Of a stretch of 64,000 bases of DNA, positions 640 to 60,334 are shown one piece after another. Below the pieces are notes generated by a model, which was given only the letters and a program-made list of their open reading frames with translations, was not told the origin of the DNA and searched no databases. Both the position numbers and the translations under genes were made by a program. Each line of letters begins with the position of its first letter. The stretch's first letter is position 1. The stretch covers positions 1 through 64,000 of the IMG/VR virus record IMGVR_UViG_3300049048_000052; one strand, 5' to 3'.

Positions 640-877
640 CTAGTTGTTAACGTAGAGGCTCTTTATCCTCTACTTCTCATAGTTTCCTATGAGTCCAGAC
701 TATATCATAGTAACCTAATGGTTACCGCCCCCGCTCGTGCCAACTTATCCTGTTCTAGGTATTGTTGGTAGTCGTTGAACCTTACTCCCATCCCGGAGAG
801 TCTTGGCTGCTGATTGCCATATCTATGTAGACTTAGGGTCCCAGCAGTTCAAGGGCTTTATACAGAGCCTTAACTTA
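640..877 (-). mobile_element. Group I intron (no internal ORF) in tail tube gene
   Basis: Minus strand has P (GAACTGCTGGGA), Q (AATCAGCAGCC), R (GTTCAACGACTA) and S (GATATAGTC) elements in order. Exon 1 ends in U and pairs with the guide GCTCTGTA (U.G at the splice site). The intron ends in G, and its removal restores the frame. Confidence 0.92.
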
Positions 878-937
878 ACCCTGTAGTGGATCGATACCCA
901 CGTTGTTGACCGGAGCCTTATACAGGTCTAAAGCCAT
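878..937 (-). CDS. Tail tube protein, exon 1 (MALDLYKAPVNNVGIDPLQG)
   Basis: ATG at 937 after AAGGAA SD-like sequence; 20 codons, then an in-frame TAA inside the intron. Confidence 0.85.
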
Positions 938-1031
938 TTTAAATGTTCCTTTTAATAAAGTTAACTATTATATACCAGGGGTATTAGGTATTAGTGTAGA
1001 TAGAACTAGACCTATAACTCTAAATCAATAA

Positions 1032-44800: not shown

Positions 44801-46660
44801 TATGACTTTGATTCCATGTCCCGCTTTATGGCATTCTCTGGTGAGAGTGGTGCCTCTGGGGCTGCTGCTGATATCTCTCAGCTCTTTCATCAACTGGGTA
44901 TGCCTGCTGATAAGCGTTCTGCTCGTTACTGGCCTGCATCTATCCATGCACTTAACGTCAGTGCTCAGAATCTGATCACCGCTTGGGTTACCCAGATGGG
45001 TGGTGAGGAAGGTAAGGGCAGCAAGGTGCTCTCCCGTTTAGGCCGTACTGCTAAGATTGGCAGCAACCTGAAAGTTAAGACTGTCCATGTTATGGGGGGT
45101 GTTAGCGAAGGTAAGTTCATCACTCGTCCTGCTTATATGCAGGGACTTCCTGTGATGGGCTTGAATCCTAATTGTGCCAGTGTTAAGCGTCTGGGTATTA
45201 AGGCGGGTGATGTAGTCATGGCGGGTCGTACTCCTATGGGCTTCCCTGTCTTCTGCTATGCAGACGTACATCCTTGCTATGCTATTGCACATGGTTACCT
45301 CTTGGCTAACGTCTGGGCCTGGTGTAACGAGGGTGACGGTGATGGTGATCCTATGGCTATCTTCAATGTGACTGGTATCATTACTGAGGATAATCAGTGG
45401 CGTTACAATCGTAAGATTGAGCTGCGTGAGCTGAGCATCAAGGCGGCTGAGTCTGGTGACTTTACCAAGGCTAAGTCTTTAAGCACTCAAGCTGAATCTA
45501 TCAAGGCTCTGCCTCTGCCTACCTATGAGAAGATGGCTGCCCTGAATAAGGGTTATCTCTCTCTCGGTGGTTATGCTGCTATCTATGGTAGCCCTCGTAA
45601 GCATCCCTTTGCTGAGTTCTGTTCTCCTGCTGATAAGTGGTCTAAGAAGCTGCTTAATCTGGATGTGGATAAGATGATGCCTGGGCATTATCCTGCTGAC
45701 GAGAAGGCAATGAAGAAGGCTACTCGTAAGTCTCTGATCACTGATATCCCTGTGATGGACTATCTCAATGCCAATGATGCAGTAGCTAATCACTATCGTA
45801 TCAATGTTGGTATTGGCTACGGGGTTGCCTCTGCTCTGGCATTCCTGTTGGCGGATCGTCGTCGTAAGGCTATCATTGAAGCCAGTAAGAAGGCTATTGC
45901 TGAGGGCCATGATGTAGAGATCTACAATGGCGGTATGCAGCTGTATATTAATAGCGATGAGGCTGATAACTTCATCCGTCTTCAACTGGCTAAGAATGAG
46001 GAGCTGGTTAACCTTACCCGTGGTACGGTATTGGCCTGGCGTATGCTGTATGAAGGCTATGGTCTGGCTGGTGTCTCTGATGAGGCAACCATGGCATTCC
46101 GTATCCTCGATGTAGCGGCTCGTTCTAATGACCGGCGTATTGCTGTAGTTACTGTGGATGGTCAACCGCGCGTTGAGTATCCTAACTTCAAGCCTGAAGC
46201 AGGTACTGTGGCTACTCAGCCTGTGCTGAAGAATGGGGCTGCCTATCTAACTAGCTTCATCTTTGAGAAGTCTCCTGAGCTCCGTCATTCTATGCTCGGT
46301 GGGGTGAATGAGCTTATTCGTGCTCGCTCTCTGACGGTAGCCATCCGCGACATGGAACGTGGTCGTGAGCCTCGTACTATGCGCCATACCACCTTTTCTG
46401 ATGTGGTAATTGCAGGTGCGTCACGTCGTCTGGGTCAGGGTCAGTTTGGTGTGCAAGAGCAGACCGACTTCTCTGATGAGGGGGACAATGAAGCACACTC
46501 CATGTTTGAGCTGTTGGAAGGTATCCGTTGTGCTAATGGTGGTGCTTATCCCGTTCATAGCAACGTGGTTAAGTACTATCTGAGTATTGGTGCCTCCATC
46601 ATGTACAGCATGGAGATGCACGCTAAGACCAAGCGTGCTGAGATGAATCAGGGCTACTAA
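41819..46660 (+). CDS. Single-subunit two-barrel RNA polymerase (YonO/crAss-like, non-virion)
   Basis: GRTP (R1137), then CNEGDGDGDPMAIF (D1173-D1177) matching beta' RxP..NADFDGDQMAVH; K732..K739 in LKLRGPGVKF resembles the beta lysine pair. Confidence 0.85.
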   Translation: MSAIDFSRLTVPATASQEQISDLIDCLGELGYQVVPGPDFRVDASDVFMPFKGVETDDVALLAYALSTVLSGLGIGLPETAADEYEAAADVDGLVQYVRAMFDNPSQEETMEEVIEVQDPTPSVKVVGSTKENLLPPIVWENRPIAEMNDIICRSMGTNWDKPLPSWVRLATAFTHIGRTILPTEWLEGGRIDRSHNYVRTDGRSILKAMYKLGVPLVGTSTKVKFSEGQPIETVEPCRFNVTFTTRDNTYFVIPEIESVVDEMPPLFDAERMSHGMVNYVHEVVSALDDETLLQFWAKFIPNSSLNGRELTFSPSGVSQYTNVIVRLPEAEDELISVSTGRTRYVNPVMDVSGIVVSGRTILTMMLMSLVNEAEYLITQSRVDGYLNLLSNMWVPAENYGAFKKSGEAIHKIYNNRELPVGMYCTLGIRYPFIHLVNVSAAANNGITSSRHMVEEFIKKGIAALPHKYGTFGKAVVFGAGVNAMGMAIARNEYGNYVVNNLETDEAWQRMIMRTVLDASKPSKFFNRPWTFFGSVFADGTEDFPLEKSKLHMMTYHPVDKEGTEFINEAVYVRGVRRKICYTNSLLTHGSGVASVNPSRQAIRYSVGKSEADMINDYSIPPTFRKVFEKDAETRNGAGMNSDWLQIVAEKLQEKADRIVDEAKATGKVFHDGDVVMTLFADLPDYKRDLVVVTAPNQDIYLERAEVVRVATTNAVRVRFFTRFEGEDYILKLRGPGVKFTTQLDDITFLSGFSDWDLFLNMECTKGELAQLYMYAEAVGECIYYPDTGLLEHVATGKVEDLKDVGAPFYKWVADNTAKEVIERKVSKEYLEYIAECHPGLVAFTEDDVTNKSDIVVKADLGHDYLVHETIQCLVGDMLFMVEISTPRENTSPAGLTLEQLALLEGVYADLALAFIHLSKEFHSGIQGMAKLILGKLPSQDQVPYLNLIEAGDVVNRVSRTDKGILMGRRLMQALKKEFPKGFVLFSTDSFGVYYDFDSMSRFMAFSGESGASGAAADISQLFHQLGMPADKRSARYWPASIHALNVSAQNLITAWVTQMGGEEGKGSKVLSRLGRTAKIGSNLKVKTVHVMGGVSEGKFITRPAYMQGLPVMGLNPNCASVKRLGIKAGDVVMAGRTPMGFPVFCYADVHPCYAIAHGYLLANVWAWCNEGDGDGDPMAIFNVTGIITEDNQWRYNRKIELRELSIKAAESGDFTKAKSLSTQAESIKALPLPTYEKMAALNKGYLSLGGYAAIYGSPRKHPFAEFCSPADKWSKKLLNLDVDKMMPGHYPADEKAMKKATRKSLITDIPVMDYLNANDAVANHYRINVGIGYGVASALAFLLADRRRKAIIEASKKAIAEGHDVEIYNGGMQLYINSDEADNFIRLQLAKNEELVNLTRGTVLAWRMLYEGYGLAGVSDEATMAFRILDVAARSNDRRIAVVTVDGQPRVEYPNFKPEAGTVATQPVLKNGAAYLTSFIFEKSPELRHSMLGGVNELIRARSLTVAIRDMERGREPRTMRHTTFSDVVIAGASRRLGQGQFGVQEQTDFSDEGDNEAHSMFELLEGIRCANGGAYPVHSNVVKYYLSIGASIMYSMEMHAKTKRAEMNQGY

Positions 46661-49317: not shown

Positions 49318-50211
49318 ATGCCAAGATCCAAGAGCAGTGTTCAAAAAGCTAGCAGATCTAAAGTTGCCACAGAGAAGCACAATATTCTCTTTGGTAAGCC
49401 GCATAAGTATAAGCCGATATTCGTGGGTTTGGAGCGTAGGCTTATCAATGGCGTGGAATGTATGGTGGGATATCATGAGTCTGCTACTGGTAGACTTGTG
49501 TTGAACTACTGGGCAGTACATGCGGATCGAGGTATGAGGATGGAGCCTGGTTGGATTCCCTTACCTAATAAGGATGCCCGATGGTCTGACTTGAAGTATG
49601 AAGGGCGTACAAGGGTGCTACTGCAGATTGAACAATGGAAGACTGAGGGTGTGATAGAACCAGAAGAATGGTCTGATGGTCAATCTACAGTAGTCAGACG
49701 TGAGAAGGATGCCAGCGATAGAATTACCATCTGGGATCCCGCTGTTATGGTAGCTCTAGATAGTAGAGATCTATTGAATGAGTTCATCAAAAGCTGCAGC
49801 ATGTGTACCCTGGTAGAGGGAGCATATCTTATCTTTGCCGATTGGATGACTCAGAAGCAATTGAAAGAGTTTGATCTTAGAAGGATGTCCTGGCTGAAGG
49901 ATAACATGGACGGGATCAAAGAGGGCGTCTTTAGGTTTGCAGAGCAGTGTGCCTCTTATGTGGCAGAGGAAGGATATGGGGATAAGATCGTAGCCTCAGT
50001 AAGGGATACCTTTGCTGAGTACTTCCTTAGTCAACTGGAGACTTATCACTTACCTTATATTGAACCAAGTCTTGAAGAAGAAGGGTTCAATCAGGATGTG
50101 AAGAGTATCCTGCAAACTAAAGGACTGGATTACTTTGCTAGGTACTATCCAACCACTCTACACTTAGGCCCAGATATGACTCATATAGATTGTTCATCTA
50201 TGTACAAGTAG
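49318..50211 (+). CDS. Hypothetical protein
   Basis: ATG after CCTAGGAGGG. Confidence 0.65.
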   Translation: MPRSKSSVQKASRSKVATEKHNILFGKPHKYKPIFVGLERRLINGVECMVGYHESATGRLVLNYWAVHADRGMRMEPGWIPLPNKDARWSDLKYEGRTRVLLQIEQWKTEGVIEPEEWSDGQSTVVRREKDASDRITIWDPAVMVALDSRDLLNEFIKSCSMCTLVEGAYLIFADWMTQKQLKEFDLRRMSWLKDNMDGIKEGVFRFAEQCASYVAEEGYGDKIVASVRDTFAEYFLSQLETYHLPYIEPSLEEEGFNQDVKSILQTKGLDYFARYYPTTLHLGPDMTHIDCSSMYK

Positions 50212-50257
50212 TATCTCCCAACCGTCCCTTCTATTAATGGAGGGCGGCCTGAGGGAT

Positions 50258-50462: not shown

Positions 50463-50548
50463 GCAACCACGGTCCAAACGGTAGGGACACTTAGGGAGGT
50501 ACTATGTACTGACTCTAGGAGATCTGGGTTCGATTCCCAGTGGTTGCA
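50463..50548 (+). tRNA. tRNA-like gene with 20-nt expanded anticodon loop
   Basis: GCAACCA/TGGTTGC acceptor, GTCC/GGAC D stem, CTGGG-TTCGATT-CCCAG T arm; anticodon not assignable. Confidence 0.7.
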
Positions 50549-50569
50549 TTATTAAACCTAGGAGGGTTT

Positions 50570-50791
50570 ATGACATATCAGTTCAAGGATGTTCATGGTG
50601 GGGACATTGCACGTATTGGGTGCTTCAAGGGTTTGAAGCAGGTTGGTTACTACCGTCAGACTGTACTAGGTGATAAACCTTGGGTCGCAGTGTTGTACGG
50701 TCCCATAAGTAACCAATTCTCAGATAGTCAGGACTTCCTTACTGAGGAGGAAGCTCAGAATTGGTTGAAGGAACGGTCTAAGTATTACTAG
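50570..50791 (+). CDS. Hypothetical protein
   Basis: ATG after CCTAGGAGGG. Confidence 0.6.
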   Translation: MTYQFKDVHGGDIARIGCFKGLKQVGYYRQTVLGDKPWVAVLYGPISNQFSDSQDFLTEEEAQNWLKERSKYY

Positions 50792-50857
50792 GAGAGGGTA
50801 GATATTAGTTAGTATCTCCCAACTCTCCCTCTCTTAGTAGAGGGGAGCCTGGGGTAT

Positions 50858-50929
50858 ACAGGATTAGTTCAGTGTTAGCAGAACATCCCCTCTAAAGGGA
50901 CAAGATAGGTTCAATTCCTATGTTCTGTT
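50858..50929 (+). tRNA. tRNA with CUA (amber) anticodon, atypical
   Basis: TCCC-CTCTAAA-GGGA anticodon arm (4 bp), ATAGG-TTCAATT-CCTAT T arm; D loop lacks GG. Confidence 0.65.
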
Positions 50930-50940
50930 ATACCCTACTC

Positions 50941-51009
50941 ACAGACCTAACTCAAGTGGAAGAGTACCCACATTGTCGGGTAGTATGGGTTCGAATCCCA
51001 TGGTCTATA
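50941..51009 (+). tRNA. Degenerate tRNA-like gene
   Basis: ACTC/GAGT D arm and ATGGG-TTCGAAT-CCCAT T arm intact; anticodon arm irregular. Confidence 0.6.
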
Positions 51010-51042
51010 ATTGTCCACTTAAATTGATTAAAGGAGTCTGTC

Positions 51043-51501
51043 ATGGTTACTACTCAAGAATTAGAGGCCGCAGGAGTGCAGGTTCACACTGCAGAGGCTA
51101 AAGTCCTCAATACCTGCCCTCATAATATCAACATCTTCCCTGAAGATGCCTTCATTAACCTGAAGCAGATCAACCCAACAACCTGGGTGGCCGATGGGGT
51201 TAAGGAAGAAGCACCGCTGTTGGCTTTCTATCCTTCAAGTGGTTCCAGTCTGCGCATTGGAGTAGAGTCCAAACCTATCGGCTCCATTGCTGGTGTTCCC
51301 TGTTACCGGGCAGTATATGGTGAGCTCTCTGGTCTCCCTGAGGAAGAGTATGACGTGATTATCACATCTCTTCCTGCGGTCAGCAATGCTAAGCTCAAGG
51401 GTCTGGCGATCGCTGAGAAGCTATGCTCACCTCATCAAGTGGTGCGTCTCTCAACTGATACCAGTGTCATCCTCGGCTGTACTGGGTTACAGTTCCAGTA
51501 A
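51043..51501 (+). CDS. Conserved-looking phage protein (NTCPHNINI..GLP..VR..ILGCTGL)
   Basis: AGGAG SD; the pattern recalls a widespread uncharacterised phage family. Confidence 0.65.
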   Translation: MVTTQELEAAGVQVHTAEAKVLNTCPHNINIFPEDAFINLKQINPTTWVADGVKEEAPLLAFYPSSGSSLRIGVESKPIGSIAGVPCYRAVYGELSGLPEEEYDVIITSLPAVSNAKLKGLAIAEKLCSPHQVVRLSTDTSVILGCTGLQFQ

Positions 51502-51519
51502 TTAGCCCTTAAGTGGGTA

Positions 51520-51591
51520 GCAGATATAGCTCAAAGGTAGAGCATATGGACGTTTGTTCATAAGATGTAGGTTCGACCCCTACTATCTGCT
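51520..51591 (+). tRNA. tRNA-like gene with 8-nt anticodon loop (Asn GTT-derived?)
   Basis: GCAGATA/TATCTGC acceptor, GCTC-AAAGGTA-GAGC D arm, loop ACGTTTGT, GTAGG-TTCGACC-CCTAC T arm. Confidence 0.7.
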
Positions 51592-51623
51592 TTGTTAAAC
51601 ATATTGATTGAAGGGAGTCCGTT

Positions 51624-51941
51624 ATGAAGGTTGATTGTTTACCTGGGTTCACATTAAGGGATGCTGTAGCTGGAGAGGATCAGTCCTTTAGCGTAGAGCA
51701 AGCTATGAAGGTGCTACATCCTCGTATATTTGAGCTATTGGTACAGAGTGTAGAACACACAAGGAAGAGGGCCCTGGAGAATGAGGTGAACTGGGCAGGC
51801 CTAAGCCCGTATGTGAGAGTGGAGATGCTTAAGGGTTTCCTTGCCTCACGTATCTCTGTCCTATTAGATATGGGAGTGGATCCTAGTGGGGCCCTGCCTA
51901 TCATCTGCTTCGTTGTGGCCTGGGTTGAGGATGTGGAGTAA
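51624..51941 (+). CDS. Hypothetical protein
   Basis: GGGAG SD. Confidence 0.6.
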   Translation: MKVDCLPGFTLRDAVAGEDQSFSVEQAMKVLHPRIFELLVQSVEHTRKRALENEVNWAGLSPYVRVEMLKGFLASRISVLLDMGVDPSGALPIICFVVAWVEDVE

Positions 51942-51979
51942 TCCACCTATTGTTAATAGCTATATACAAGGAGATGACC

Positions 51980-52222
51980 ATGAACCTAGAAGCACGATAT
52001 CCACAACACTGCCCTCATGATGGGGCAGTGATTGATCCTGATGGATCAAAATGTTATCAGGGTGAGGAGATCTGGGATATCTTCCCAGCTGATAATCCTA
52101 TGGCTGACTCATTGTACCAAGCGTCCTCCGCCTGGTGTGTAAGGAATAATGTGGCCATGCTGGTGGCTGATGATTATTCAAGTCCTGAGGACTATGGGTA
52201 TCCTGATTCTGACCTTCGTTGA
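51980..52222 (+). CDS. Hypothetical acidic protein
   Basis: AGGAG SD. Confidence 0.6.
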   Translation: MNLEARYPQHCPHDGAVIDPDGSKCYQGEEIWDIFPADNPMADSLYQASSAWCVRNNVAMLVADDYSSPEDYGYPDSDLR

Positions 52223-52230
52223 GGTATAGT

Positions 52231-52422
52231 ATGCCAACGTTTGAGGAATTCAAAGCAATGGTGAGGGCCCACTTGAAACAGGAGGGTCTATGGTCTGAGG
52301 ATATGGAGGCTGGCTTCAGTGAAGATAGTCAGGATGTAGGCTACCGGTGCTACCAACTAAGGTGGGGTAATATCAATTTGGCCTATAACCAAGTCTCCGA
52401 TAAGATAGACTTTGTGGAGTAG
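52231..52422 (+). CDS. Small acidic protein, paralogue 1
   Basis: FEEFKAMVR..EGLWSEDME..FSE shared with 52425. Confidence 0.65.
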   Translation: MPTFEEFKAMVRAHLKQEGLWSEDMEAGFSEDSQDVGYRCYQLRWGNINLAYNQVSDKIDFVE

Positions 52423-52424
52423 CC

Positions 52425-52631
52425 ATGCTTAGCTACGAGGACTTTCAGTCTATTGTCCGTCAGGATATGATGGACCAGGGTAGATGGAGTGAGGATCTAG
52501 AGTCTTGTTTCAGCGATCTCAGTGATATGGTAGGGCATCCATCCTATCAGTTCTATGCGCCCAATGTAGCATCAGCTATGTATGGGTATGACCGAGGTAT
52601 ATGGTTGTATGGTGAACCTGGAGGAGATTGA
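52425..52631 (+). CDS. Small acidic protein, paralogue 2
   Basis: YEDFQSIVR..QGRWSEDLE..FSD. Confidence 0.65.
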   Translation: MLSYEDFQSIVRQDMMDQGRWSEDLESCFSDLSDMVGHPSYQFYAPNVASAMYGYDRGIWLYGEPGGD

Positions 52632-52996
52632 TTATGCGTTTGTTCCTTTGTTTAGTGTTGGGTGCCCTGTGTGCTCCTATGTTACCTGTTGCACCTACAT
52701 TAGCCGGTGCCTTCCCCTGTGAGACTAACAAGACCCTAAAGCAGTTCAACTATGTGTGGGTGGGTCTGGGTACTAGTAAATGGGAGAGGGTAGAGGCTGC
52801 GGTGATGAAGGCCTTTGATAGACGCTTCCCTGATGCCACTAACCGACCCAGTGTGGCCTACTGTTCTCGTACAGTAGACGGACTAGCATTCTATAACTTT
52901 GCCAGTGCAGCAGAGCGAGTAGAATGGGAGTCCATTGCTCATCGGGCTGCTAATAGTGTTGAGCAGGGTACACCTGTTCTCAACATTCGTCATTAG
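52628..52996 (+). CDS. Secreted/signal-peptide protein
   Basis: MRLFLCLVLGALCAPMLPVAPTLA signal-like N-terminus. Confidence 0.6.
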   Translation: MIMRLFLCLVLGALCAPMLPVAPTLAGAFPCETNKTLKQFNYVWVGLGTSKWERVEAAVMKAFDRRFPDATNRPSVAYCSRTVDGLAFYNFASAAERVEWESIAHRAANSVEQGTPVLNIRH

Positions 52997-53053
52997 TTTG
53001 GGGGGAGGCCCCTTGGTCTCCTTATTCATATTAGATATACATAGGGGAAACTA

Positions 53054-53350
53054 ATGGAAAGTCCAGCAAGTATTACTGTCTCTGCCTCCTGGCTCTTCAG
53101 GAGCAAAGCTGTCAGCATGTGGAGTACTGACTTCGAAGAGACTGCTGAGTATGTCATGCTTAGCTCTAGTAAGGGGGTATTCCAGTTACTCAAAGATGGT
53201 AAGATCTGCGATGTAGAAGAAGTATTCAATAGCCGTCCTGGAACTGCCCTGTATAAGGGTAGTGTCTATAAGATTAAGTCTGGGTACTTCTTTGTTGGAG
53301 TTGCAGAGGGGGAGGGTATTGAGACCCCTGTTCTATTGATTGTGGAGTAA
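53054..53350 (+). CDS. Hypothetical protein
   Basis: ORF with GGGG SD-like sequence. Confidence 0.55.
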   Translation: MESPASITVSASWLFRSKAVSMWSTDFEETAEYVMLSSSKGVFQLLKDGKICDVEEVFNSRPGTALYKGSVYKIKSGYFFVGVAEGEGIETPVLLIVE

Positions 53351-53357
53351 TCCACGG

Positions 53358-53432
53358 GCCCACCATGCATATATGGATAATGCACTACCTCTGAACAAGG
53401 TAGGTTTTCAGGTTCGAATCCTGAGGTGGGCA
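53358..53432 (+). tRNA. tRNA-Phe(GAA)-like, atypical (C37, 6-bp anticodon stem)
   Basis: GCCCACC/GGTGGGC acceptor, CTACCT-CTGAACA-AGGTAG, TCAGG-TTCGAAT-CCTGA. Confidence 0.75.
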
Positions 53433-53980
53433 TAGACTGATAGGGAGGAACGGGCCTTGAGCCAACGTATTCCTATTAGTTGAGGGTGGTAAGGACCCTA
53501 CGATGGTTCTTATTGCTCAAGCCTAGGTCGTAGTGACGTACTTCCTAGCTAGGCCCAGTAAAGTTTGCTAGGTTTGATAAATGGGTCGAAGTACAAACCT
53601 AACTGCAGGGATATGCCGCCCTGTTAGTCTTTGACGGGGGAAACCCGCATTGAGTAGTACAACCAAGTAGGGAGCACCACCCCCTAGGAGGAATAGGCAA
53701 GGTATACGTCTGCTCATATCTATTGTGGTGATAGGTATGGGCGCATGGTCCCTACGTTAAGGGGTACCACTCTCTTGATGAAGAGACGTTTCCTAGTTCG
53801 TAAACTAGGTGGTGGAGTGCCTTCCGTGGGGACGCTGTTCTCATTGGCTAGTGCCCCTCAGGTCTACTATGGGAAACCATAGGGTAGCTATAACCTTGAC
53901 GATACTCGAAAGAGTTGGGGCAGGGCTATGGACTTATTAGCTACAAGTACAGAGGGGAAGGGGTCATAGCCTTCCCCTAT
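53433..53980 (+). ncRNA. Candidate large structured ncRNA (about 550 nt) downstream of tRNA
   Basis: ORF-free, GC-richer; about a dozen hairpins including GAAA-capped stems and a terminal AGGGGAAGG/CCTTCCCCT stem. Confidence 0.65.
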
Positions 53981-54110
53981 AATTAAAACTTATAAATAAT
54001 TAGAAAGTCTTTGTCTTGACCCTATAGGAAAAAGTTGCCTTTATCTCTTAAATGAGGTAAATCATAGGTAACTATACCTAATAAATGAGCTCCATCAATA
54101 AGTAGAGCTT

Positions 54111-54467
54111 ATGGATATGAAGGATAGAGACAATGATAGGGTGAGTCAGGAATGGGCCACAAGGTTAGTACTATTGAGAGATGGTATTAGTATTAGGCCC
54201 ATAGATGTATTAACCGGACCCAATAGGGAATGGAATCCTGCTGTATGGAGAGCACTGGAGAATAGGATAGATGGTAGTGGTGTGGTCCTAATGGACTGTG
54301 TCGTATCGTTTATGGATGCCTGGTGTGAGAAGTATAGTGAGGATGAGGTGGCTAACCTAAGAGCTATGGGGACTGTGATGACCCCTACTTTAGGTGAAGG
54401 ATGGTATGAGTGCCAACTATGGTGCCATCTCATCTTGAAGGCGGGTGATGTATTTAAGTTCCTATAG
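54111..54467 (+). CDS. Hypothetical protein
   Basis: ORF track. Confidence 0.55.
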   Translation: MDMKDRDNDRVSQEWATRLVLLRDGISIRPIDVLTGPNREWNPAVWRALENRIDGSGVVLMDCVVSFMDAWCEKYSEDEVANLRAMGTVMTPTLGEGWYECQLWCHLILKAGDVFKFL

Positions 54468-54597
54468 ATAGAGAGGGATTGGTTGAGATAGTGTATCTTA
54501 TTTAGGATGATGGGGTGTATCCCTCCACTTCATCATCCTAATTCTTCTTTAAATTGAACTTTACCCTTTTAACCTATTGATTGATGGAGAAGTACGT

Positions 54598-54855
54598 ATG
54601 AGCAGTAAGACTCAGAGTGCAAAACTAGACGCTAGTAACTATGAGCTAGTAATGAACTCTTGGGTGCCAGGGCAGCCTGCCACTCGTGTATGGAAGGGAC
54701 CCGATGGTACTGAGGTAGAGATTCAGCAACAACTGAATCAGGTCCAGGTGAAAGTTAATGGTAATAAACTCAGTATCCCTACTCGTGTGACGACTGAGTT
54801 ACCAGAGCTTATGAGATCTTACAAAGCAGCATTTGAGAATGCCCTGGGGGATTAA
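54598..54855 (+). CDS. Hypothetical protein
   Basis: ATG after GGAG. Confidence 0.55.
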   Translation: MSSKTQSAKLDASNYELVMNSWVPGQPATRVWKGPDGTEVEIQQQLNQVQVKVNGNKLSIPTRVTTELPELMRSYKAAFENALGD

Positions 54856-54941
54856 TGGTGGTAGCAAGACCAGTTCTAAGGGGGCGGCCCCCTGATCATA
54901 CTCCTGAGCCCCCTCGTATTTTACAGGGGTTCAGTAGAGAT

Positions 54942-55451
54942 ATGAACCTATTTACTAGTATCTTCATTGATGCTGGTAATATGTTTCATGCTCAGCAGAA
55001 GCAGGGATGGTTCTTCGATCCTAAGAAGATCATTAAGTACGCTGTACCTGACGAACATTATCTAGTGAATGCTTGGTGGCATACTGCCATTAAGGATGAA
55101 CAGGATAACATTCTGTTCAGGGATGCTTTAACCTCCATGGGTTATAGTGTTATGACTAGACCCCTTAAGGAGTACTATGACCCTCGTCGTGGTATCACTA
55201 CCCAACACGGCAATTGCGATGTGGATATCGTAATTGATATGGTGAATACATGGGGGCAATATCAACATGCGGTGGTCTTTACAGGTGATGGTGACTTCCT
55301 TTATGCATTTGAGCAGATGCATGAGAGGAACATAAAGGTAACGGTGGTAGGTGCAGAGGGTATGATATCTAGGGACCTACGGAGTGTGCCCTGGATTAAC
55401 ATTGTATACCTGGACCAAATAAAGGAGCATATTATCAAGATTCGGTACTAA
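54942..55451 (+). CDS. NYN-domain (LabA/DUF88-like) protein
   Basis: IFIDAGNM, CDVDIVIDM, VVFTGDGDF, VTVVGAEGMISRDLR motifs; WFFDP..LKEYYD is typical of cyanobacterial LabA-family proteins. Confidence 0.88.
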   Translation: MNLFTSIFIDAGNMFHAQQKQGWFFDPKKIIKYAVPDEHYLVNAWWHTAIKDEQDNILFRDALTSMGYSVMTRPLKEYYDPRRGITTQHGNCDVDIVIDMVNTWGQYQHAVVFTGDGDFLYAFEQMHERNIKVTVVGAEGMISRDLRSVPWINIVYLDQIKEHIIKIRY

Positions 55452-55659
55452 GGCTGGAGGGGGTAGTTACCCCCTTCATACTTGTTGTCTACTTAATTGA
55501 ATAACCATGGTGGTAGGTAAACCACCTAAGAGAAAGCTTCCTGGGGGTCTCTGCCTCATTAGTGGTGATCATAGTCACCATAAGCTCTTAGCCGGTGTGT
55601 TGAGAGGTTAACAGAGGGCAACTCAAACAAACCCTAGTCAATTAAAAGAGGACAAGACA

Positions 55660-56289
55660 ATGACGAACCAAATGCCTGCACAACAAGCTGTACAGAACGT
55701 TGGCTACACCAACGAGTTCGATAGCCTGGACAACTATGCCCCCGGTCAGATCTTCCGTGTGGATGCCTATCTGATTGATACCAAAGGTGATGCTGCGAGC
55801 AACAGTATCCTGCGGATGTATCCTGTGGCTCCCTCGCACATCGATCCCCGGTTGGTCCTGTCCGTTGTGCCTATCTACATCACCTGCACCGTTGAAGAAT
55901 GGCGTCAACGCAATAACTATGAGGACGGGGATACTATCTCCCTCTTCGTACGTAAGGGCACCATCAATGCCCGTGTTGACCTGGCTTCTCCTGCTGCCGT
56001 CCAGAAGGAAATGAAGCGTCTGGGTTACACCGACGTCAATCAGTTCCCCTACTACCCCGTGCGTATCAAACCTCAGAATGAGGAGACCAAAGGCATGACC
56101 GAGGAAGAACTGAAGGTCCGTGCTTACACTGCGGTGAACGGTAACACTGTTCGTACTGCTCAGCGGCAGGGTCTGAAGGGTGAACAACTGGTGGCTGCGG
56201 TGGCTCAGCGGGATACTGTGGCTGCCCAAGAGAAGGGTGTCAAGGCTGCACTGCTTGGTGTGATGAACCTCGCTAAGTCGATGTTCTAA
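55660..56289 (+). CDS. Highly expressed hypothetical protein, possibly OB-fold
   Basis: Extreme host-like codon bias; beta-rich core; GAGGA SD. Confidence 0.7.
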   Translation: MTNQMPAQQAVQNVGYTNEFDSLDNYAPGQIFRVDAYLIDTKGDAASNSILRMYPVAPSHIDPRLVLSVVPIYITCTVEEWRQRNNYEDGDTISLFVRKGTINARVDLASPAAVQKEMKRLGYTDVNQFPYYPVRIKPQNEETKGMTEEELKVRAYTAVNGNTVRTAQRQGLKGEQLVAAVAQRDTVAAQEKGVKAALLGVMNLAKSMF

Positions 56290-56354
56290 CGGTTAGGTAA
56301 ATAGATGGGGGCCCTTCAGCCTCCATCTATTTATTCTAATTAACTGGATTGACA

Positions 56355-56723
56355 ACAATGATTGACGTAAGAAACGTAGAGACCACTGGCACGATTAAAG
56401 AAGAGTATGAGTACTACGTAAGATGTAGACTCTTATTTCCTGTACTCAGGTCAATGGTTGAGGATTGGGAGGCCCTACAGGATGAGATGGTAATCATCAT
56501 GGAGAGCCAGGGTATATATGGATTAATTATAGAAATGAGTAGGCCCACTAGGGCTGAGATCTCCAAACACAGGGAGGTATGTAAGTTATTAGTAAATTAT
56601 ATACAAGCTGGTGACCCTACCTTAGAGGTCCTATTAGATGATGATCTAGTAGAAGAGGCAGAATCATTTGCCTCCACTCTAATGGTAGATCGTTTGGAGA
56701 GACTCCTACAAAAGAACATATAG
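56355..56723 (+). CDS. Hypothetical protein
   Basis: ORF track. Confidence 0.55.
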   Translation, partial: TMIDVRNVETTGTIKEEYEYYVRCRLLFPVLRSMVEDWEALQDEMVIIMESQGIYGLIIEMSRPTRAEISKHREVCKLLVNYIQAGDPTLEVLLDDDLVEEAESFASTLMVDRLERLLQKNI

Positions 56724-56755
56724 TTCAAAACTGCATTGAAGGGAGTTCCTGTACT

Positions 56756-57475
56756 ATGAACGAGATACCATTGGGTACGGATGCTAAGGGGGTGTATTAC
56801 TGGTTAGTTCAGACTAAACAGGGTGTTAAGGTTATGGCTAGAGACCGTAAGGGTAATGTGAAGGGGGCTGAGCATGTGCCCACTGAGTTACTCAGTGGAG
56901 GCTTAAGGCTACAGGATCTAACTACTAGGGCACAAACTCTGTGTGACTCTCTCTATGAGAGTGACGACTTCTATAGCATGGCCAAGGAGGTCCTAAAACT
57001 AGATACAGCAATCCGTGCTGAGCTAGGGTTAGATCGTGCACCTAATATCAGGGATACCTATAAAGCGGCCCTTGAGAAGGTACGAACTGTAGCCATGCAC
57101 CTTCTGGGTATTGCTATCACTAAGGGTATTGCTAATGAGACGGGCTGCGGGGATATGGAGAAGATGCTGAGGTGTCATAAGAGTCTATTGGCACTCACAG
57201 ATAATCTAAAGGGCTTCTCTCCTCCCTTAGACCCAGATTTGATTCAAAAGTATCTGGCATTCTTATCCGGTATTCGGGATAAGATTATCGACTGGGTTGA
57301 CATACCTCTGTCCCCAGATGAGAAAGTACAGATAAGGGAGATACTGAAGCAGTACATCAGACTGGTAGGTGTCCTTGCCCAAAGGAACAATGCGGTGAAT
57401 CAACACCAGGTTGAGTACCGTTGGGTTAAGGAATACATAGAGAACGGTGGGGATATTAACCAGATCCCCTTGTAA
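56756..57475 (+). CDS. Hypothetical helical protein
   Basis: GGGAG SD. Confidence 0.6.
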   Translation: MNEIPLGTDAKGVYYWLVQTKQGVKVMARDRKGNVKGAEHVPTELLSGGLRLQDLTTRAQTLCDSLYESDDFYSMAKEVLKLDTAIRAELGLDRAPNIRDTYKAALEKVRTVAMHLLGIAITKGIANETGCGDMEKMLRCHKSLLALTDNLKGFSPPLDPDLIQKYLAFLSGIRDKIIDWVDIPLSPDEKVQIREILKQYIRLVGVLAQRNNAVNQHQVEYRWVKEYIENGGDINQIPL

Positions 57476-57587
57476 TCAGAATAGTGGAGCTTTAAGGAGC
57501 CCTTGGTATGAGAAGTGATGCTCTTATACCATAAAGTGAGTAGAAGGGTTTAGCATCAACTCTTCTTCTACCTCTTAATGAGGTATA

Positions 57588-57661
57588 GCTATAGTGGTGT
57601 TTGGAGAACACATGGGTCCGAATGTGGACTCAGGAAGCGGGTGCGACTCCCGTCTATGGTT
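57588..57661 (+). tRNA. tRNA-like gene with 7-bp anticodon stem and 6-nt loop
   Basis: GCTATAG/CTATGGT acceptor, TGGGTCC-GAATGT-GGACTCA, GCGGG-TGCGACT-CCCGT. Confidence 0.55.
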
Positions 57662-57970: not shown

Positions 57971-58043
57971 CCAAGGTTGGCCGAGCGGTTGAGGCAGCAA
58001 ACTCATAATTTGCCCTAGGCAGGTTCAACTCCTGCACCTTGGA
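57971..58043 (+). tRNA. tRNA-CAU (Ile2 or Met), canonical
   Basis: CCAAGGT/ACCTTGG, GCAAA-CTCATAA-TTTGC, GCAGG-TTCAACT-CCTGC; no encoded CCA. Confidence 0.92.
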
Positions 58044-58580: not shown

Positions 58581-59153
58581 ATGAAAGGACGCTGGTTACT
58601 GGGCTCGTGTGTCTTACTGGGGTTACTATGGGCTAGTCCTAAACCCCAGGCAAAGACATTGAAGGATTACTGTGGTCCTAAGAATGGGGCCTATCTGGTC
58701 AAGGGTGAAGTACGAGAGGTTAAGGTAGGTAGCAGTAATAGGGCACAGGTTACGGTCGTTAACAAGGATCAGACCAGGTGCCCTATTACTGTGTTCCTGA
58801 GGATAGATGATGTTAAGTTCAGGGTTGGTGATGTAGTCCAATTCCAAGTGGATAAGTCTGGCCTTAACTGGACTAACATAAGGGGCCTCAAGGTTAATCC
58901 TGTAGGTGGTACCGGGCTAGATGGTAAGGATAGCGGTAATTGGCTTACCTCCCGTATGAGTACTAGGGACCTAGTTGATTCCTTGGATCCTGAGTACTAT
59001 ATGGTGGATATGACCTGGGATGCCTATGGCTACCGTTACACCACCTTACTTATACCTAAGGGCATGGCATGGAAGATGGAGAAGGAGGCAGTCTATAAAC
59101 TCTACTTTGGTGGAGATAAGATTGTCACTACTATTGAGAAGGAGGGGAGCTAA
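58581..59153 (+). CDS. Signal-peptide protein with OB-fold-like beta core
   Basis: MKGRWLLGSCVLLGLLWA leader; coupled (TAATG) to the next gene. Confidence 0.6.
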   Translation: MKGRWLLGSCVLLGLLWASPKPQAKTLKDYCGPKNGAYLVKGEVREVKVGSSNRAQVTVVNKDQTRCPITVFLRIDDVKFRVGDVVQFQVDKSGLNWTNIRGLKVNPVGGTGLDGKDSGNWLTSRMSTRDLVDSLDPEYYMVDMTWDAYGYRYTTLLIPKGMAWKMEKEAVYKLYFGGDKIVTTIEKEGS

Positions 59154-60334
59154 TGTTTACTATTGGTTTATTAGTAGGGGCGGCCATGGGTGTTATCCAT
59201 GGTTACTTCCCTACTATTGGTGTTACCTTTACCCTAGTAGGTCTCTACATTGGTACCATGAATCTAGATATGGGTCTAGGTTACCTGGTAGCTGAGAGTA
59301 CAGTCTCTGGTATTGGGAAGGTAATTGGAGAAGGAGTGGGTGGCCTCAATGCTGTCCATAATCCATACTTTGCTAGTAGGGGACTCCAAGGTTCACTAGA
59401 GCAAAGAGTAGAGGGTGCCAAGGATGGTCTCTATCAGTACATGATTAGTAAGGGTGTTGCCGTAATGGGTGGTATCGGGCTTGTCATGTTTGGTCTACCT
59501 TATATGACAGTAAAACCAGGGGAGGCCATTGTGCTCTGCTCAGGTGGTGTAGGAGTACTCCTCATTAGCTGGCTAGTCTTCACGGTTAAGGATAAGCTGG
59601 CCTTCTTTGTAATCGTAGGTAGTACGGTGGGTGCCGCCATTATCACTATTAAGGCTGGTGGTATTGCCCCTATGTATTCCTTATTCACTGCCATCTTTAG
59701 TATTGGTGGCCTCCTAGTAGATAGGAGTAAGACAATAGTAAAGGGTAAGAAGTGGGTTATGGTTACTAAGGAGAAGGAGCCCCTTGATGCTAGTTGGGCT
59801 ATGTTCGCTGGCGCCTGTTCTGCATTCCTCATTGGTATACCCAATACTATTATGCTGAGCCTTAGTGCTACTGATGAAGTAGCTAAGACAGAGAGGACAC
59901 TCTATGTTGAGGGCTGTATTAGTGCGGGGGTAAGTGAGGGTATGGGCCTCGTACTCTTCTTAGTAGCATTTGGTAGTAGAGATGCACTCTCTTCTACTAT
60001 GAGTCTACTAGTGGACGGTCTTGATGTTGGTCAGAGTCTGGTAATTCTGGCTGCCTCATTGATCCTCATGTGGTTCACCTTCATGAACCTAAGTGAGAAA
60101 TGGATATACCATCATCTACTAGGTAAGATGACAGGTGAGAATAAGTGGGTCAAGAGGATAAGCATAGCGGTAAGCTTTGCCACTATGGTCCTCATCAGTG
60201 GTCCCTGGCTTAGCATACTATTGGTAATCATGGGTGTATTCCTACAGAAGGCGGTGATACGTCACTATGTACCTGAGGAGACTATCCTTGCTATGCTCTG
60301 TGTCCTACCCTTCATTCTATTCTGGATGGGGTAA
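59153..60334 (+). CDS. Multi-pass membrane protein (possibly TctA/DUF112-like)
   Basis: Roughly ten hydrophobic segments; GAAMGVIHGYFPTIG and FLIGIP resemble TctA GxxPG loops (weak). Confidence 0.55.
   Translation: MFTIGLLVGAAMGVIHGYFPTIGVTFTLVGLYIGTMNLDMGLGYLVAESTVSGIGKVIGEGVGGLNAVHNPYFASRGLQGSLEQRVEGAKDGLYQYMISKGVAVMGGIGLVMFGLPYMTVKPGEAIVLCSGGVGVLLISWLVFTVKDKLAFFVIVGSTVGAAIITIKAGGIAPMYSLFTAIFSIGGLLVDRSKTIVKGKKWVMVTKEKEPLDASWAMFAGACSAFLIGIPNTIMLSLSATDEVAKTERTLYVEGCISAGVSEGMGLVLFLVAFGSRDALSSTMSLLVDGLDVGQSLVILAASLILMWFTFMNLSEKWIYHHLLGKMTGENKWVKRISIAVSFATMVLISGPWLSILLVIMGVFLQKAVIRHYVPEETILAMLCVLPFILFWMG

What the first reader, a model, noticed from the sequence alone, without database searches (positions are those of the whole stretch)
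50463..57661. Set of tRNA-like genes with intact elbows and acceptor stems but damaged anticodon arms
Seen: 50463 (20-nt loop), 50941 (irregular), 51520 (8-nt loop), 53358 (C37, 6-bp stem) and 57588 (6-nt loop) keep D/T arms and acceptor pairing, so decay is concentrated in the anticodon arm. Established: phage tRNAs counter anticodon nucleases through anticodon-loop changes. Inference: decoys for tRNA-targeting defences, synthetases or uncharged-tRNA sensors rather than decoders.
Basis: partly seen in the sequence, partly recalled or inferred. Interest (0 to 1): 0.7.

Follow-up and report, generated by a model that had tools for sequence, protein, structure and literature searches.

The report
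Non-decoding tRNA-shaped genes in a jumbo phage
A 252-kb uncultured phage from soil (probably a cyanophage) carries, among its early genes, five genes that fold like tRNAs but whose anticodon arms are rebuilt so that four of them cannot read codons; they look like tRNA-shaped RNA modules kept for processing or binding, not for translation, and their role is untested.

Summary
All five elements lie on the coding strand between ORFs. Each has the cloverleaf as its minimum-energy fold. They show 79 of 80 paired positions in acceptor, D and T stems, and all have non-standard anticodon arms. "Damaged" is the wrong word, though. The arms are fully paired and mostly longer than normal (12 bp plus a triloop; 7 bp plus 4 or 6 nt; 6 bp plus 7 nt). 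That is remodelling, not random decay. 53358 keeps a 7-nt loop with anticodon GAA and may still decode. 57588 is the weakest element (T-loop UGCGACU, no Rfam tRNA hit).

The same genome holds about six more such elements outside the window, including a tRNA-like scaffold with a complete tRNA-Arg nested in its anticodon arm. Aberrant and normal tRNAs share a UU trailer after the discriminator, and none encodes CCA.

My best reading (0.4): they are co-transcribed, tRNA-shaped substrates of RNase P and RNase Z. These enzymes would cut the polycistronic RNA and release stable non-decoding tRNA-like RNAs, as with plant-mitochondrial t-elements or T4 rnaC.

A phage Rnl1-plus-kinase cassette hints at tRNA-directed conflict, but known anticodon nucleases read the loop that is missing here.

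No relatives and no RNA data exist, so conservation and expression could not be tested.

The parts
50463..50548 (+). tRNA-like gene A. The acceptor, D and T arms are perfect. The anticodon arm is expanded to about 30 nt (7 bp, a bulge, 5 bp, UAU triloop). The discriminator is A and the trailer is UUA. The next ORF's RBS and ATG (50571) lie 22 nt downstream.
   Evidence: Rfam tRNA 40.6 bits; fold z -3.5; arm pair counts
50858..50929 (+). Near-canonical amber-suppressor-type tRNA (anticodon CUA, loop CUCUAAA). It is a cluster neighbour, not one of the five.
   Evidence: ARAGORN; Rfam 37.4 bits
50941..51009 (+). tRNA-like gene B. It is 69 nt long, with a C2:A71 mismatch, a 4-bp anticodon stem and the 8-nt loop ACAUUGUC. 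The D and T arms are perfect.
   Evidence: ARAGORN 'tRNA-???'; Rfam 38.4 bits; folds
51520..51591 (+). tRNA-like gene C. It has the best tRNA scaffold of the five. The anticodon arm is 7 bp + a GUUU tetraloop (or 5 bp + an 8-nt loop). The trailer is UUG.
   Evidence: Rfam 56.8 bits; fold z -3.6
53358..53432 (+). tRNA-like gene D. It is Phe(GAA)-like with a 6-bp anticodon stem and the 7-nt loop CUGAACA (C37). It may still decode. It starts 7 nt after the stop of ORF 53054-53350.
   Evidence: ARAGORN Phe; Rfam 38.7 bits in the narrow search; fold z -4.4
53433..54110 (+). A 678-nt stretch with no ORF over 50 aa, directly downstream of D and strongly structured. It is possibly an RNA released by 3' cleavage of D; the link is inferred.
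   Evidence: MFE -250.6 against -207.7 +/- 7.6 kcal/mol for shuffles, z -5.7; no gene called; no Rfam family
57588..57661 (+). tRNA-like gene E, the most divergent. It has a 7-bp anticodon stem with the 6-nt loop GAAUGU and the T loop UGCGACU. Three of its scaffold pairs are G-U.
   Evidence: Strict frame scan; cloverleaf as minimum-energy fold, z -2.1; no Rfam tRNA hit
57971..58043 (+). Canonical tRNA with anticodon CAU. It is a cluster neighbour.
   Evidence: ARAGORN; Rfam 52.2 bits
54855..55451 (+). ORF with an NYN-domain (PIN-like) predicted ribonuclease, sitting between elements D and E. It is context only; no link has been shown.
   Evidence: Pfam PF01936, E 4e-22; nearest solved structure 2qip, function unknown

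Best explanation
These are real genes for tRNA-shaped RNAs that no longer decode (four of five). They keep exactly the parts that tRNA end-processing enzymes read.

Proposed mechanism:
1. They lie on the coding strand, 7-120 nt after one ORF and mostly 20-35 nt before the next ribosome-binding site. They are therefore transcribed as part of the polycistronic early-gene RNA (inferred from position).
2. RNase P cuts at their 5' end. RNase Z cuts after the discriminator, where a UU trailer follows. The host CCA-adding enzyme then finishes them. This is inferred. [quoted passage not shown]
3. The cuts divide the mRNA at fixed points and release stable 69-86-nt tRNA-like RNAs. Plant-mitochondrial t-elements work this way (PMC1920247), and phage T4 species 1 RNA is a comparable product.

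With no decoding constraint, the anticodon arm is free to change. It stays helical because the L-shape must still fold.

Whether the released RNAs have a further job, such as binding or sponging a host or phage factor, is open.
For: Shown:
- The scaffolds are intact. In the five elements, the non-anticodon stems have 76 Watson-Crick pairs, 3 G-U pairs and 1 mismatch out of 80 pairs. Across 11 aberrant elements genome-wide the counts are 161/12/3 of 176. That is no worse than the phage's 15 canonical tRNAs (215/13/12 of 240).
- GG is present in every D loop, and TTCRANY is present in 4 of 5 T loops.
- The anticodon arms are fully paired and extended, not mismatched.
- All elements are on the coding strand and intergenic. 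The - strand has none and shuffled genomes have about none.
- TT directly follows the discriminator in 19 of 26 tRNA and tRNA-like genes, including 8 of 11 aberrant ones. The genome-wide TT frequency is 0.061 (p = 3e-18 and 3e-8). None encodes CCA. Both classes therefore carry the same flank signature.
- Sigma-70-like promoter matches are fewer than chance in 48.5-59.5 kb (8 found against 19.9 expected), which is consistent with long transcripts.
- Element D is followed at once by a 678-nt highly structured ORF-free RNA region.
- Outside the window, a tRNA-like scaffold encloses a whole tRNA-Arg in its anticodon arm. That architecture only makes sense if RNase P and RNase Z act on it.

Established elsewhere:
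- RNase P cleaves acceptor/T-arm model substrates (PMC11143913).
- t-elements direct RNase P/Z cleavage of mRNAs (PMC1920247).
- tRNA-like modules with tRNase Z processing occur in MHV68 TMERs (PMC4838037).
- T4 rnaC has a perfect T arm and an acceptor-like stem.
Against: - There are no expression or end-mapping data. No RNA run could be listed.
- No relatives carry these elements, so there is no covariation or conservation test.
- Cleavage by RNase P/Z would follow from the shape whether or not it is the selected function, so 'punctuation' may be a by-product.
- Only 2 of the 5 in-window elements have TT exactly at +1/+2. Two have A then TT, and one has TAG.
- Element E has a U55-to-G change that should weaken the elbow RNase P reads.
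- An intact scaffold is also what a freshly inactivated pseudogene looks like.
- Ascertainment favours intact scaffolds.
Confidence: 0.4

Rival explanations
1. Decoys or sponges. After excision, the tRNA-shaped RNAs bind and titrate a host tRNA-directed defence nuclease, a tRNA-binding toxin, a synthetase or another tRNA sensor. They are themselves uncleavable because the anticodon loop is closed.
For: - The scaffold is kept while the usual cleavage target is removed or closed into short loops.
- The phage carries an Rnl1-like RNA ligase next to an AAA_33 kinase. In T4 this enzyme pair repairs anticodon-nuclease damage (PMC2610378), so tRNA-directed conflict is likely.
- Phage tRNAs are known to counter tRNA-targeting defences (PMC10264068, PMC11555353).
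- The elements sit among small early-region ORFs of unknown function.
Against: - Known anticodon nucleases (PrrC, RloC, colicins D/E5, VapC; PMC10264068) act on the anticodon loop. A decoy without that loop would bind poorly unless the target reads the acceptor, elbow or T arm.
- The five arms share no common sequence or length, so there is no common 'bait'.
- PMC10264068 does not use the word 'decoy'. I found no precedent for such a decoy, but I did not search for one specifically.
- No partner has been identified.
Confidence: 0.2
2. Recently disabled tRNA pseudogenes with no selected function. Indels or insertions hit the anticodon arm, and the rest has not yet had time to decay.
For: - Elements B and C are one nucleotide away from a 7-nt loop.
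- Insertion events do occur in this genome's tRNA genes. There are group I introns in tRNA-Ser and tRNA-Leu, a tRNA-Arg inside another tRNA-like gene, and a roughly 100-nt hairpin in another.
- No relatives are available to show conservation.
- Ascertainment bias applies: only elements with intact scaffolds can be recognised.
Against: - About 11 of roughly 28 tRNA-shaped genes are aberrant, yet their scaffolds show 3 mismatches in 176 pairs, no more than the working tRNAs.
- Elements A, D and E need several coordinated changes to give longer, fully paired arms (12, 6 and 7 bp). Random decay should break pairs.
- The phage genome is densely packed (88% in ORFs of 100 codons or more).
- A relaxed scan of 48-60 kb found no half-decayed T arms outside the known elements.
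- The UU trailer is retained.
Confidence: 0.25
3. Unusual decoders. D is a working tRNA-Phe whose C37 and longer stem make it resistant to a host nuclease. B and C, with 8-nt loops, read four-base codons or promote frameshifting.
For: - D keeps U33, anticodon GAA, A73, a 7-nt loop and 38.7 Rfam bits.
- A second aberrant tRNA outside the window, Tyr(GUA), also has C37, so this could be a systematic trait.
- Loop substitutions in decoding phage tRNAs are documented (PMC10264068).
- 8-nt loops are the hallmark of frameshift-suppressor tRNAs (PMC4238358).
Against: - B and C lack U33 (they have C33), and the outer loop bases pair to give 4-6-nt loops.
- A and E have no presentable anticodon.
- C37 and a 6-bp anticodon stem are very rare in decoding tRNAs (my own knowledge).
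- The genome reads well in the standard code, with no sign of recoding.
Confidence: 0.1

Closest known systems
Phage T4 small stable RNAs: rnaC (species 1) and rnaD (species 2) in the T4 tRNA cluster
   Same: They are phage-encoded, sit beside real tRNAs, and are co-transcribed and excised with them. rnaC has a perfect T arm (CCGGG-UUCGAAU-CCCGG) and an acceptor-like closing stem, while its other arms are not tRNA-like. Their function is still unknown.
   Different: The T4 RNAs are 119-139 nt and lack a D arm and cloverleaf. The elements here keep the full cloverleaf and differ only in the anticodon arm. There are many more of them, and they are scattered between ORFs rather than placed in one array.
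t-elements of plant mitochondria (tRNA-like processing signals)
   Same: They have non-canonical cloverleaves with a conserved GGTTCRANYCC T arm. They lie next to protein genes on the same strand. RNase P and RNase Z cut them to make mRNA ends, and they are released as stable RNAs that can receive CCA-type tails (PMC1920247).
   Different: t-elements are organellar, not viral, and their cleavage is shown experimentally. Here cleavage is only inferred.
Phage tRNAs with anticodon-loop substitutions that evade anticodon nucleases (van den Berg et al. 2023, PMC10264068)
   Same: These are also phage tRNA genes whose differences from host tRNAs concentrate in the anticodon loop. Element D (A37 replaced by C, anticodon kept) fits this pattern.
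   Different: The published cases keep a 7-nt loop and a working anticodon and remain decoders. Elements A, B, C and E change loop size and stem length and cannot decode.
MHV68 TMERs (viral tRNA-like elements fused to downstream RNAs)
   Same: A viral tRNA-like module is recognised by tRNase Z, and the cleavage liberates the downstream structured RNA (PMC4838037). This is comparable to element D followed by the 678-nt structured region.
   Different: TMERs belong to a eukaryotic herpesvirus, are Pol III transcripts, and have pre-miRNAs downstream. There is no sequence relationship.

Membership tests
Canonical decoding tRNA (Rfam RF00005) | 7-bp acceptor stem, D arm with G18G19, and T arm with a T-Psi-C-R-A loop | tested here: met
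   A, C and D have all pairs Watson-Crick. B has one C:A mismatch. E has 3 G-U pairs and the T loop UGCGACU. GG is present in all D loops.
Canonical decoding tRNA (Rfam RF00005) | Score above the Rfam gathering threshold (29 bits) | tested here: met
   A 40.6, B 38.4, C 56.8 and D 38.7 bits. E is not met: there is no tRNA hit, only tRNA-Sec at 14.9 bits.
Canonical decoding tRNA (Rfam RF00005) | 5-bp anticodon stem with a 7-nt loop, U33 and a purine at position 37 | tested here: not met
   A: 20 nt between the stem halves. B: 8-nt loop. C: 8-nt loop, or 4-nt as folded. D: 6-bp stem and C37. E: 7-bp stem and 6-nt loop. All 15 canonical tRNAs of this phage have a purine at 37.
t-element-like RNase P/Z processing signals | Non-canonical cloverleaf with a conserved T arm, lying beside protein genes on the same strand | tested here: met
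   All five are intergenic and on the coding strand, 7-120 nt from the upstream stop.
t-element-like RNase P/Z processing signals | Transcript ends coincide with the element borders, and RNase P and RNase Z cleave there | not testable with these tools
   No RNA run could be listed for this DNA. The only indirect hint is the shared UU trailer and the absence of encoded CCA.
Nuclease-evading decoding phage tRNAs (PMC10264068) | Intact anticodon and 7-nt loop, with substitutions at loop positions | tested here: not met
   Only D meets this (CUGAACA, C37). A, B, C and E have changed loop size.
Nuclease-evading decoding phage tRNAs (PMC10264068) | Insensitivity to a host anticodon nuclease | not testable with these tools
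   Host and nuclease are unknown. The phage has an Rnl1-like ligase and a kinase, which is context only.
Frameshift-suppressor or quadruplet-decoding tRNAs | 8-nt anticodon loop that keeps U33 and a purine 3' of the anticodon | tested here: not met
   B (ACAUUGUC) and C (ACGUUUGU) have 8-nt loops but C at position 33. The loop ends pair in the minimum-energy fold.
Intron-containing tRNA (group I intron in the anticodon loop) | A recognisable group I intron between the two tRNA halves | tested here: not met
   Rfam finds group I introns in two tRNAs elsewhere in the genome but none in 49.5-59 kb at E up to 10. The 13 extra nt in A are too few, and they show no bulge-helix-bulge motif.

The most novel reading that the evidence does not exclude
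This phage maintains a whole family of about ten anticodon-less tRNA mimics under selection. They would be a counter-defence or host-takeover device: RNAs that keep the tRNA elbow and acceptor to occupy a host tRNA-directed immune nuclease, toxin or tRNA-handling enzyme, while being immune to anticodon cleavage. The nested tRNA-in-tRNA-like gene and the tRNA-like-plus-678-nt RNA would be further uses of the same scaffold.
Probability: 0.15. Interest if true: 0.8.

Novelty: new member of a known kind. Interest (0 to 1): 0.45.

Why it matters
Why phages carry tRNA genes is an old question. It is usually answered by codon supply or, more recently, by replacing tRNAs destroyed by host defences.

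Here is a phage in which about 40% of the tRNA-shaped genes cannot decode, yet their acceptor, D and T scaffolds are as clean as those of the working tRNAs. That points to a use of the tRNA shape itself. The use could be as a processing signal that structures polycistronic RNA, or as a ligand for tRNA-binding proteins.

If the scaffolds prove to be conserved or the RNAs abundant, these elements would be a simple natural system. It could be used to ask what RNase P, RNase Z, CCA-adding enzyme and tRNA-directed defence nucleases recognise apart from the anticodon.

If they are only young pseudogenes, the finding is ordinary.

Tried and rejected
Searches for relatives, which are needed for any conservation test, all failed:
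- DNA searches of 50.3-58.1 kb against 50,697 phage records, in near and distant modes, gave no match.
- Protein-anchored scans of IMG/VR with ORF 51043-51501 and with the NYN ORF found nothing.
- Both of those proteins find only themselves among 5.8 billion proteins.
- A full HMMER search gave homologues of 47% identity or less. The four I looked up lie on 1-2-kb contigs, and the three contigs scanned (from two of those proteins) carry no tRNAs.
- Capsid-protein relatives (48-64% identity) carry only 0-2 ordinary tRNAs, unrelated to these elements.
- Pattern scans for elements A and C in IMG/VR and for A in metagenomes gave nothing.
- A metagenome scan for D's anticodon arm gave two chance hits in coding DNA.
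- Scans of 185,579 genomes for C's scaffold and for a canonical phage tRNA gave nothing.
- The second run holding this DNA is the same phage at low depth.
- No RNA run could be listed.

Ideas I rejected:
- The odd loops are assembly errors. A second assembly is identical.
- The elements are chance cloverleaves.
- The elements are recent paralogues of each other or of the normal tRNAs. Only T-arm similarity exists.
- The insertions belong to a repeated mobile element. They are unique in the genome.
- 57588 is the 3' half of an intron-split tRNA-Gln, as ARAGORN -i suggests. No group I intron is present and a complete local cloverleaf exists.
- Stop-codon reassignment explains the suppressor tRNA.
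- A T-arm-like patch at 52065-52088 is a decayed element. It is a 12-nt chance repeat inside an ORF.

Neighbouring ORFs gave no tRNA-related annotation apart from the NYN domain.

Full report
WHAT THE WINDOW IS

The window is the first 64 kb of a 251,780-bp virus record that CheckV rates complete. The DNA was found in soil metagenome runs. The genome encodes a tail sheath, a major capsid protein and a Mu-type portal, so it is a large myovirus.

Several hints point to a cyanobacterial host. Distant protein matches go to Microcystis and Cylindrospermopsis phages. Elsewhere in the genome lie a cyanobacterial-type or permuted tmRNA-like RNA and tRNAs with group I introns. No phage in GenBank resembles the region at the DNA level.

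CHECKING THE OBSERVATION

ARAGORN finds five tRNA-type genes in the window. They are a suppressor-type tRNA(CUA) at 50858, two 'tRNA-???' at 50941 and 51519, tRNA-Phe(GAA) at 53358 and tRNA(CAU) at 57971.

- 50463-50548: 40.6 bits
- 50941-51009: 38.4 bits
- 51520-51591: 56.8 bits
- 53358-53432: 38.7 bits

57588-57661 gets no tRNA hit.

Reading the sequence, folding it and counting pairs arm by arm confirms each description:
- A (50463) has perfect acceptor, D and T arms and 20 nt between the halves of a 5-bp anticodon stem.
- B (50941) has a C2:A71 mismatch and a 4-bp stem with an 8-nt loop.
- C (51520) has an 8-nt loop.
- D (53358) has a 6-bp stem and the loop CUGAACA with C37.
- E (57588) has a 7-bp stem with a 6-nt loop.

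The cloverleaf is the minimum-energy fold of all five. The z-scores against shuffles are -3.5, -1.2, -3.6, -4.4 and -2.1.

A strict cloverleaf-frame scan required 7/7 acceptor pairs, 4/4 D pairs, 5/5 T pairs and a T-loop motif. It finds 13 frames on the + strand of the genome, none on the - strand, and one in 20 dinucleotide-shuffled genomes. A second assembly of the DNA is identical over 41-61.5 kb at depth 69. The elements are real and are not artefacts.

First, the anticodon arms are not 'damaged' in the sense of decay. They are fully paired and mostly longer than normal:
- A folds into a 7-bp plus 5-bp helix capped by a UAU triloop.
- C folds into 7 bp plus a GUUU tetraloop.
- D has 6 bp.
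- E has 7 bp.

Random decay should break pairs. Here pairs were added.

Second, E is not fully intact elsewhere. Its T loop is UGCGACU, with position 55 changed to G. Three of its scaffold pairs are G-U.

There is also an ascertainment problem. A tRNA-like gene is recognised through its acceptor, T and D arms, so elements that decayed there would not be seen. A relaxed scan of 48-60 kb found no half-decayed T arms outside the known elements. One similar-looking patch at 52065 is a chance 12-mer inside an ORF.

THE SET IS LARGER THAN THE WINDOW

The whole genome has about 28 tRNA-shaped genes, all on the + strand. Two are tRNAs split by group I introns. About 15 are canonical, each with a 7-nt loop and a purine at position 37.

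About 11 have aberrant anticodon arms. Beyond the five in the window, these include:
- 101265, with a 5-nt loop.
- 135062, with a 6-nt loop.
- A second Tyr(GUA) with C37 and a stem mismatch.
- 112396-112567, with a 6-nt loop plus a roughly 100-nt hairpin.
- 103982-104146, a perfect acceptor/D/T scaffold whose roughly 14-bp anticodon arm encloses a complete tRNA-Arg(CCU).

In acceptor, D and T stems the aberrant class has 161 Watson-Crick pairs, 12 G-U pairs and 3 mismatches out of 176 pairs. The canonical class has 215, 13 and 12 out of 240. So the non-decoders' scaffolds are at least as clean as those of the working tRNAs.

The elements are not recent copies of one another. Their inserted sequences are unique in the genome.

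FLANKS AND CONTEXT

None of the 26 uninterrupted genes encodes CCA. In 19 of them, TT follows the discriminator directly. The genome-wide TT frequency is 0.061, giving a binomial p of 3e-18. Eight of the 11 aberrant elements share this feature, with p of 3e-8.

Among the five in the window, A and C have TT exactly, B and E have A then TT, and D has TAG. A U-rich trailer and absence of CCA are what one expects of precursors matured by RNase Z and the CCA-adding enzyme (my own knowledge of bacterial and cyanobacterial tRNA maturation). The phage has no CCA-adding enzyme of its own.

The elements are wedged between same-strand ORFs:
- A ends 22 nt before the next start codon.
- B ends 33 nt before the next start codon.
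- C starts 18 nt after a stop and ends 32 nt before a start.
- D starts 7 nt after a stop.

Sigma-70-like promoter matches in the region are below chance, while hairpin-plus-U sites are above chance.

D is followed by 678 nt with no ORF over 50 aa. That stretch folds far better than shuffles (z = -5.7) and matches no Rfam family.

An NYN-domain predicted RNase lies between D and E. The other neighbours have no informative matches.

HOW IT MOST LIKELY WORKS

What is shown:
- The shape of the elements.
- Their strand and position.
- Clean scaffolds.
- Remodelled but helical anticodon arms.
- A trailer signature shared with the real tRNAs.

What is established elsewhere:
- tRNA-like t-elements beside plant-mitochondrial genes are cut by RNase P and RNase Z to make mRNA ends, and they accumulate as stable RNAs (PMC1920247).
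- A herpesvirus uses tRNA-like modules so that tRNase Z frees downstream RNAs (PMC4838037).
- T4 keeps two stable non-tRNA RNAs in its tRNA cluster. One of them, rnaC, has a perfect T arm and an acceptor-like stem.

What is inferred: the elements are transcribed within the early polycistronic RNA, and the host tRNA-processing enzymes excise them. This cuts the mRNA at fixed points and yields stable non-decoding tRNA-like RNAs. The anticodon arm is free of decoding constraint but stays helical so that the L-shape folds. I put this at 0.4. Cleavage would follow from the shape even if the selected function lies elsewhere.

RIVAL EXPLANATIONS

It is compatible with everything above and gains some plausibility from an Rnl1-like RNA ligase next to a P-loop kinase at 174.5-176 kb. 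In T4 this enzyme pair repairs anticodon-nuclease damage (PMC2610378). But the nucleases cited act on the anticodon loop (PMC10264068), which these RNAs lack, and the five arms share no common bait.
- Young pseudogenes (0.25). This cannot be excluded without relatives. B and C are one nucleotide from a normal loop. It does not explain why so many elements have spotless scaffolds and lengthened, fully paired arms.
- Unusual decoders (0.1). This is credible only for D, which keeps U33, GAA and A73. B and C lack U33.

WHAT COULD NOT BE DONE

Neither could be tested. No RNA run could be listed. Every route to relatives failed.

VERDICT

The 'decoy' part is untested and mechanistically awkward for anticodon nucleases.

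The elements are best filed as phage tRNA-like stable-RNA or processing modules. That makes them a new member of a known kind, whose closest described relatives in function are T4 rnaC/rnaD and t-elements. Interest is moderate. It would rise sharply if selection on the scaffold or a binding partner were shown.

Noticed in passing
window 53433-54110: A 678-nt stretch with no ORF over 50 aa lies directly after tRNA-like element D. Its predicted fold is -250.6 kcal/mol, against -207.7 +/- 7.6 for shuffles (z = -5.7). It matches no Rfam family. It is a candidate large structured RNA.
   Followed up: partly
window 50858-50929: An amber-suppressor-type tRNA (anticodon CUA, normal 7-nt loop) is present, although the genome uses TAG as an ordinary stop (68 of 183 long ORFs). 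It shows no sign of stop-codon reassignment.
   Followed up: partly
L014:2983-3147 (genome 103982-104146, outside the window): A tRNA-like scaffold with perfect acceptor, D and T arms has a roughly 14-bp anticodon arm that encloses a complete tRNA-Arg(CCU) (60 Rfam bits). It is a tRNA gene nested inside a tRNA-like gene.
   Followed up: partly
L014:11397-11568 (genome 112396-112567): A tRNA-like gene (Rfam 38.7 bits) has a 6-nt anticodon loop plus a roughly 100-nt long hairpin before the T arm. ARAGORN reads it as tRNA-Gly(CCC) with an 85-nt intron.
   Followed up: partly
L015:480-1156 and L015:10488-10729 (genome 120479-121155 and 130487-130728); also window 676-968 (-): Group I introns are present. 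Two lie inside tRNA genes: Ser(GCU) and a tRNA-Leu. One lies in the window on the minus strand near the tail-sheath gene.
   Followed up: no
L015:12327-12563 (genome 132326-132562): There are sub-threshold matches to cyanobacterial tmRNA (43 bits) and permuted tmRNA (45 bits). This may be a phage-borne tmRNA-like gene and hints at a cyanobacterial host.
   Followed up: no
genome 174532-175945 (outside the window): A T4 Rnl1-type RNA ligase (PF09511, E 3e-19) lies next to an AAA_33 P-loop kinase (E 3e-21), which looks like an RNA-repair cassette. There are also two PF09414 ligases at 84342 and 188585. No RtcB and no CCA-adding enzyme were found.
   Followed up: partly
window 51023, 51603, 54576, 57735, 58047 and about 50 more genome-wide: The motif ATTGATT occurs 54 times on the + strand and 20 times on the - strand. 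It mostly lies 0-30 nt upstream of start codons, often directly before the Shine-Dalgarno sequence. It could be a phage promoter element or a translation or processing signal.
   Followed up: partly
all tRNA and tRNA-like genes of the genome: TT directly follows the discriminator base in 19 of 26 genes (p = 3e-18), and none encodes CCA. This is a shared 3'-processing signature.
   Followed up: yes
window 54855-55451: An NYN-domain (PIN-like) predicted ribonuclease sits inside the tRNA-like region. Its nearest solved structure is 2qip, of unknown function.
   Followed up: partly
window 59153-60334: An ORF resembles TctA-family membrane transporter proteins by language-model features (0.90) and by predicted structure (TM 0.63). 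This is unusual phage cargo.
   Followed up: no
window 51932-51946 and 53341-53355; 50209-50229 and 50810-50830: There are repeated short intergenic modules. An identical 15-nt hairpin, TGTGGAGTAATCCAC, closes two ORFs. TAGTATCTCCCAAC follows two ORF stops, upstream of tRNA-type genes.
   Followed up: no
window 16633-27786 and 41819-46660: Two very large ORFs (3717 aa and 1613 aa) of unexamined function lie here.
   Followed up: no
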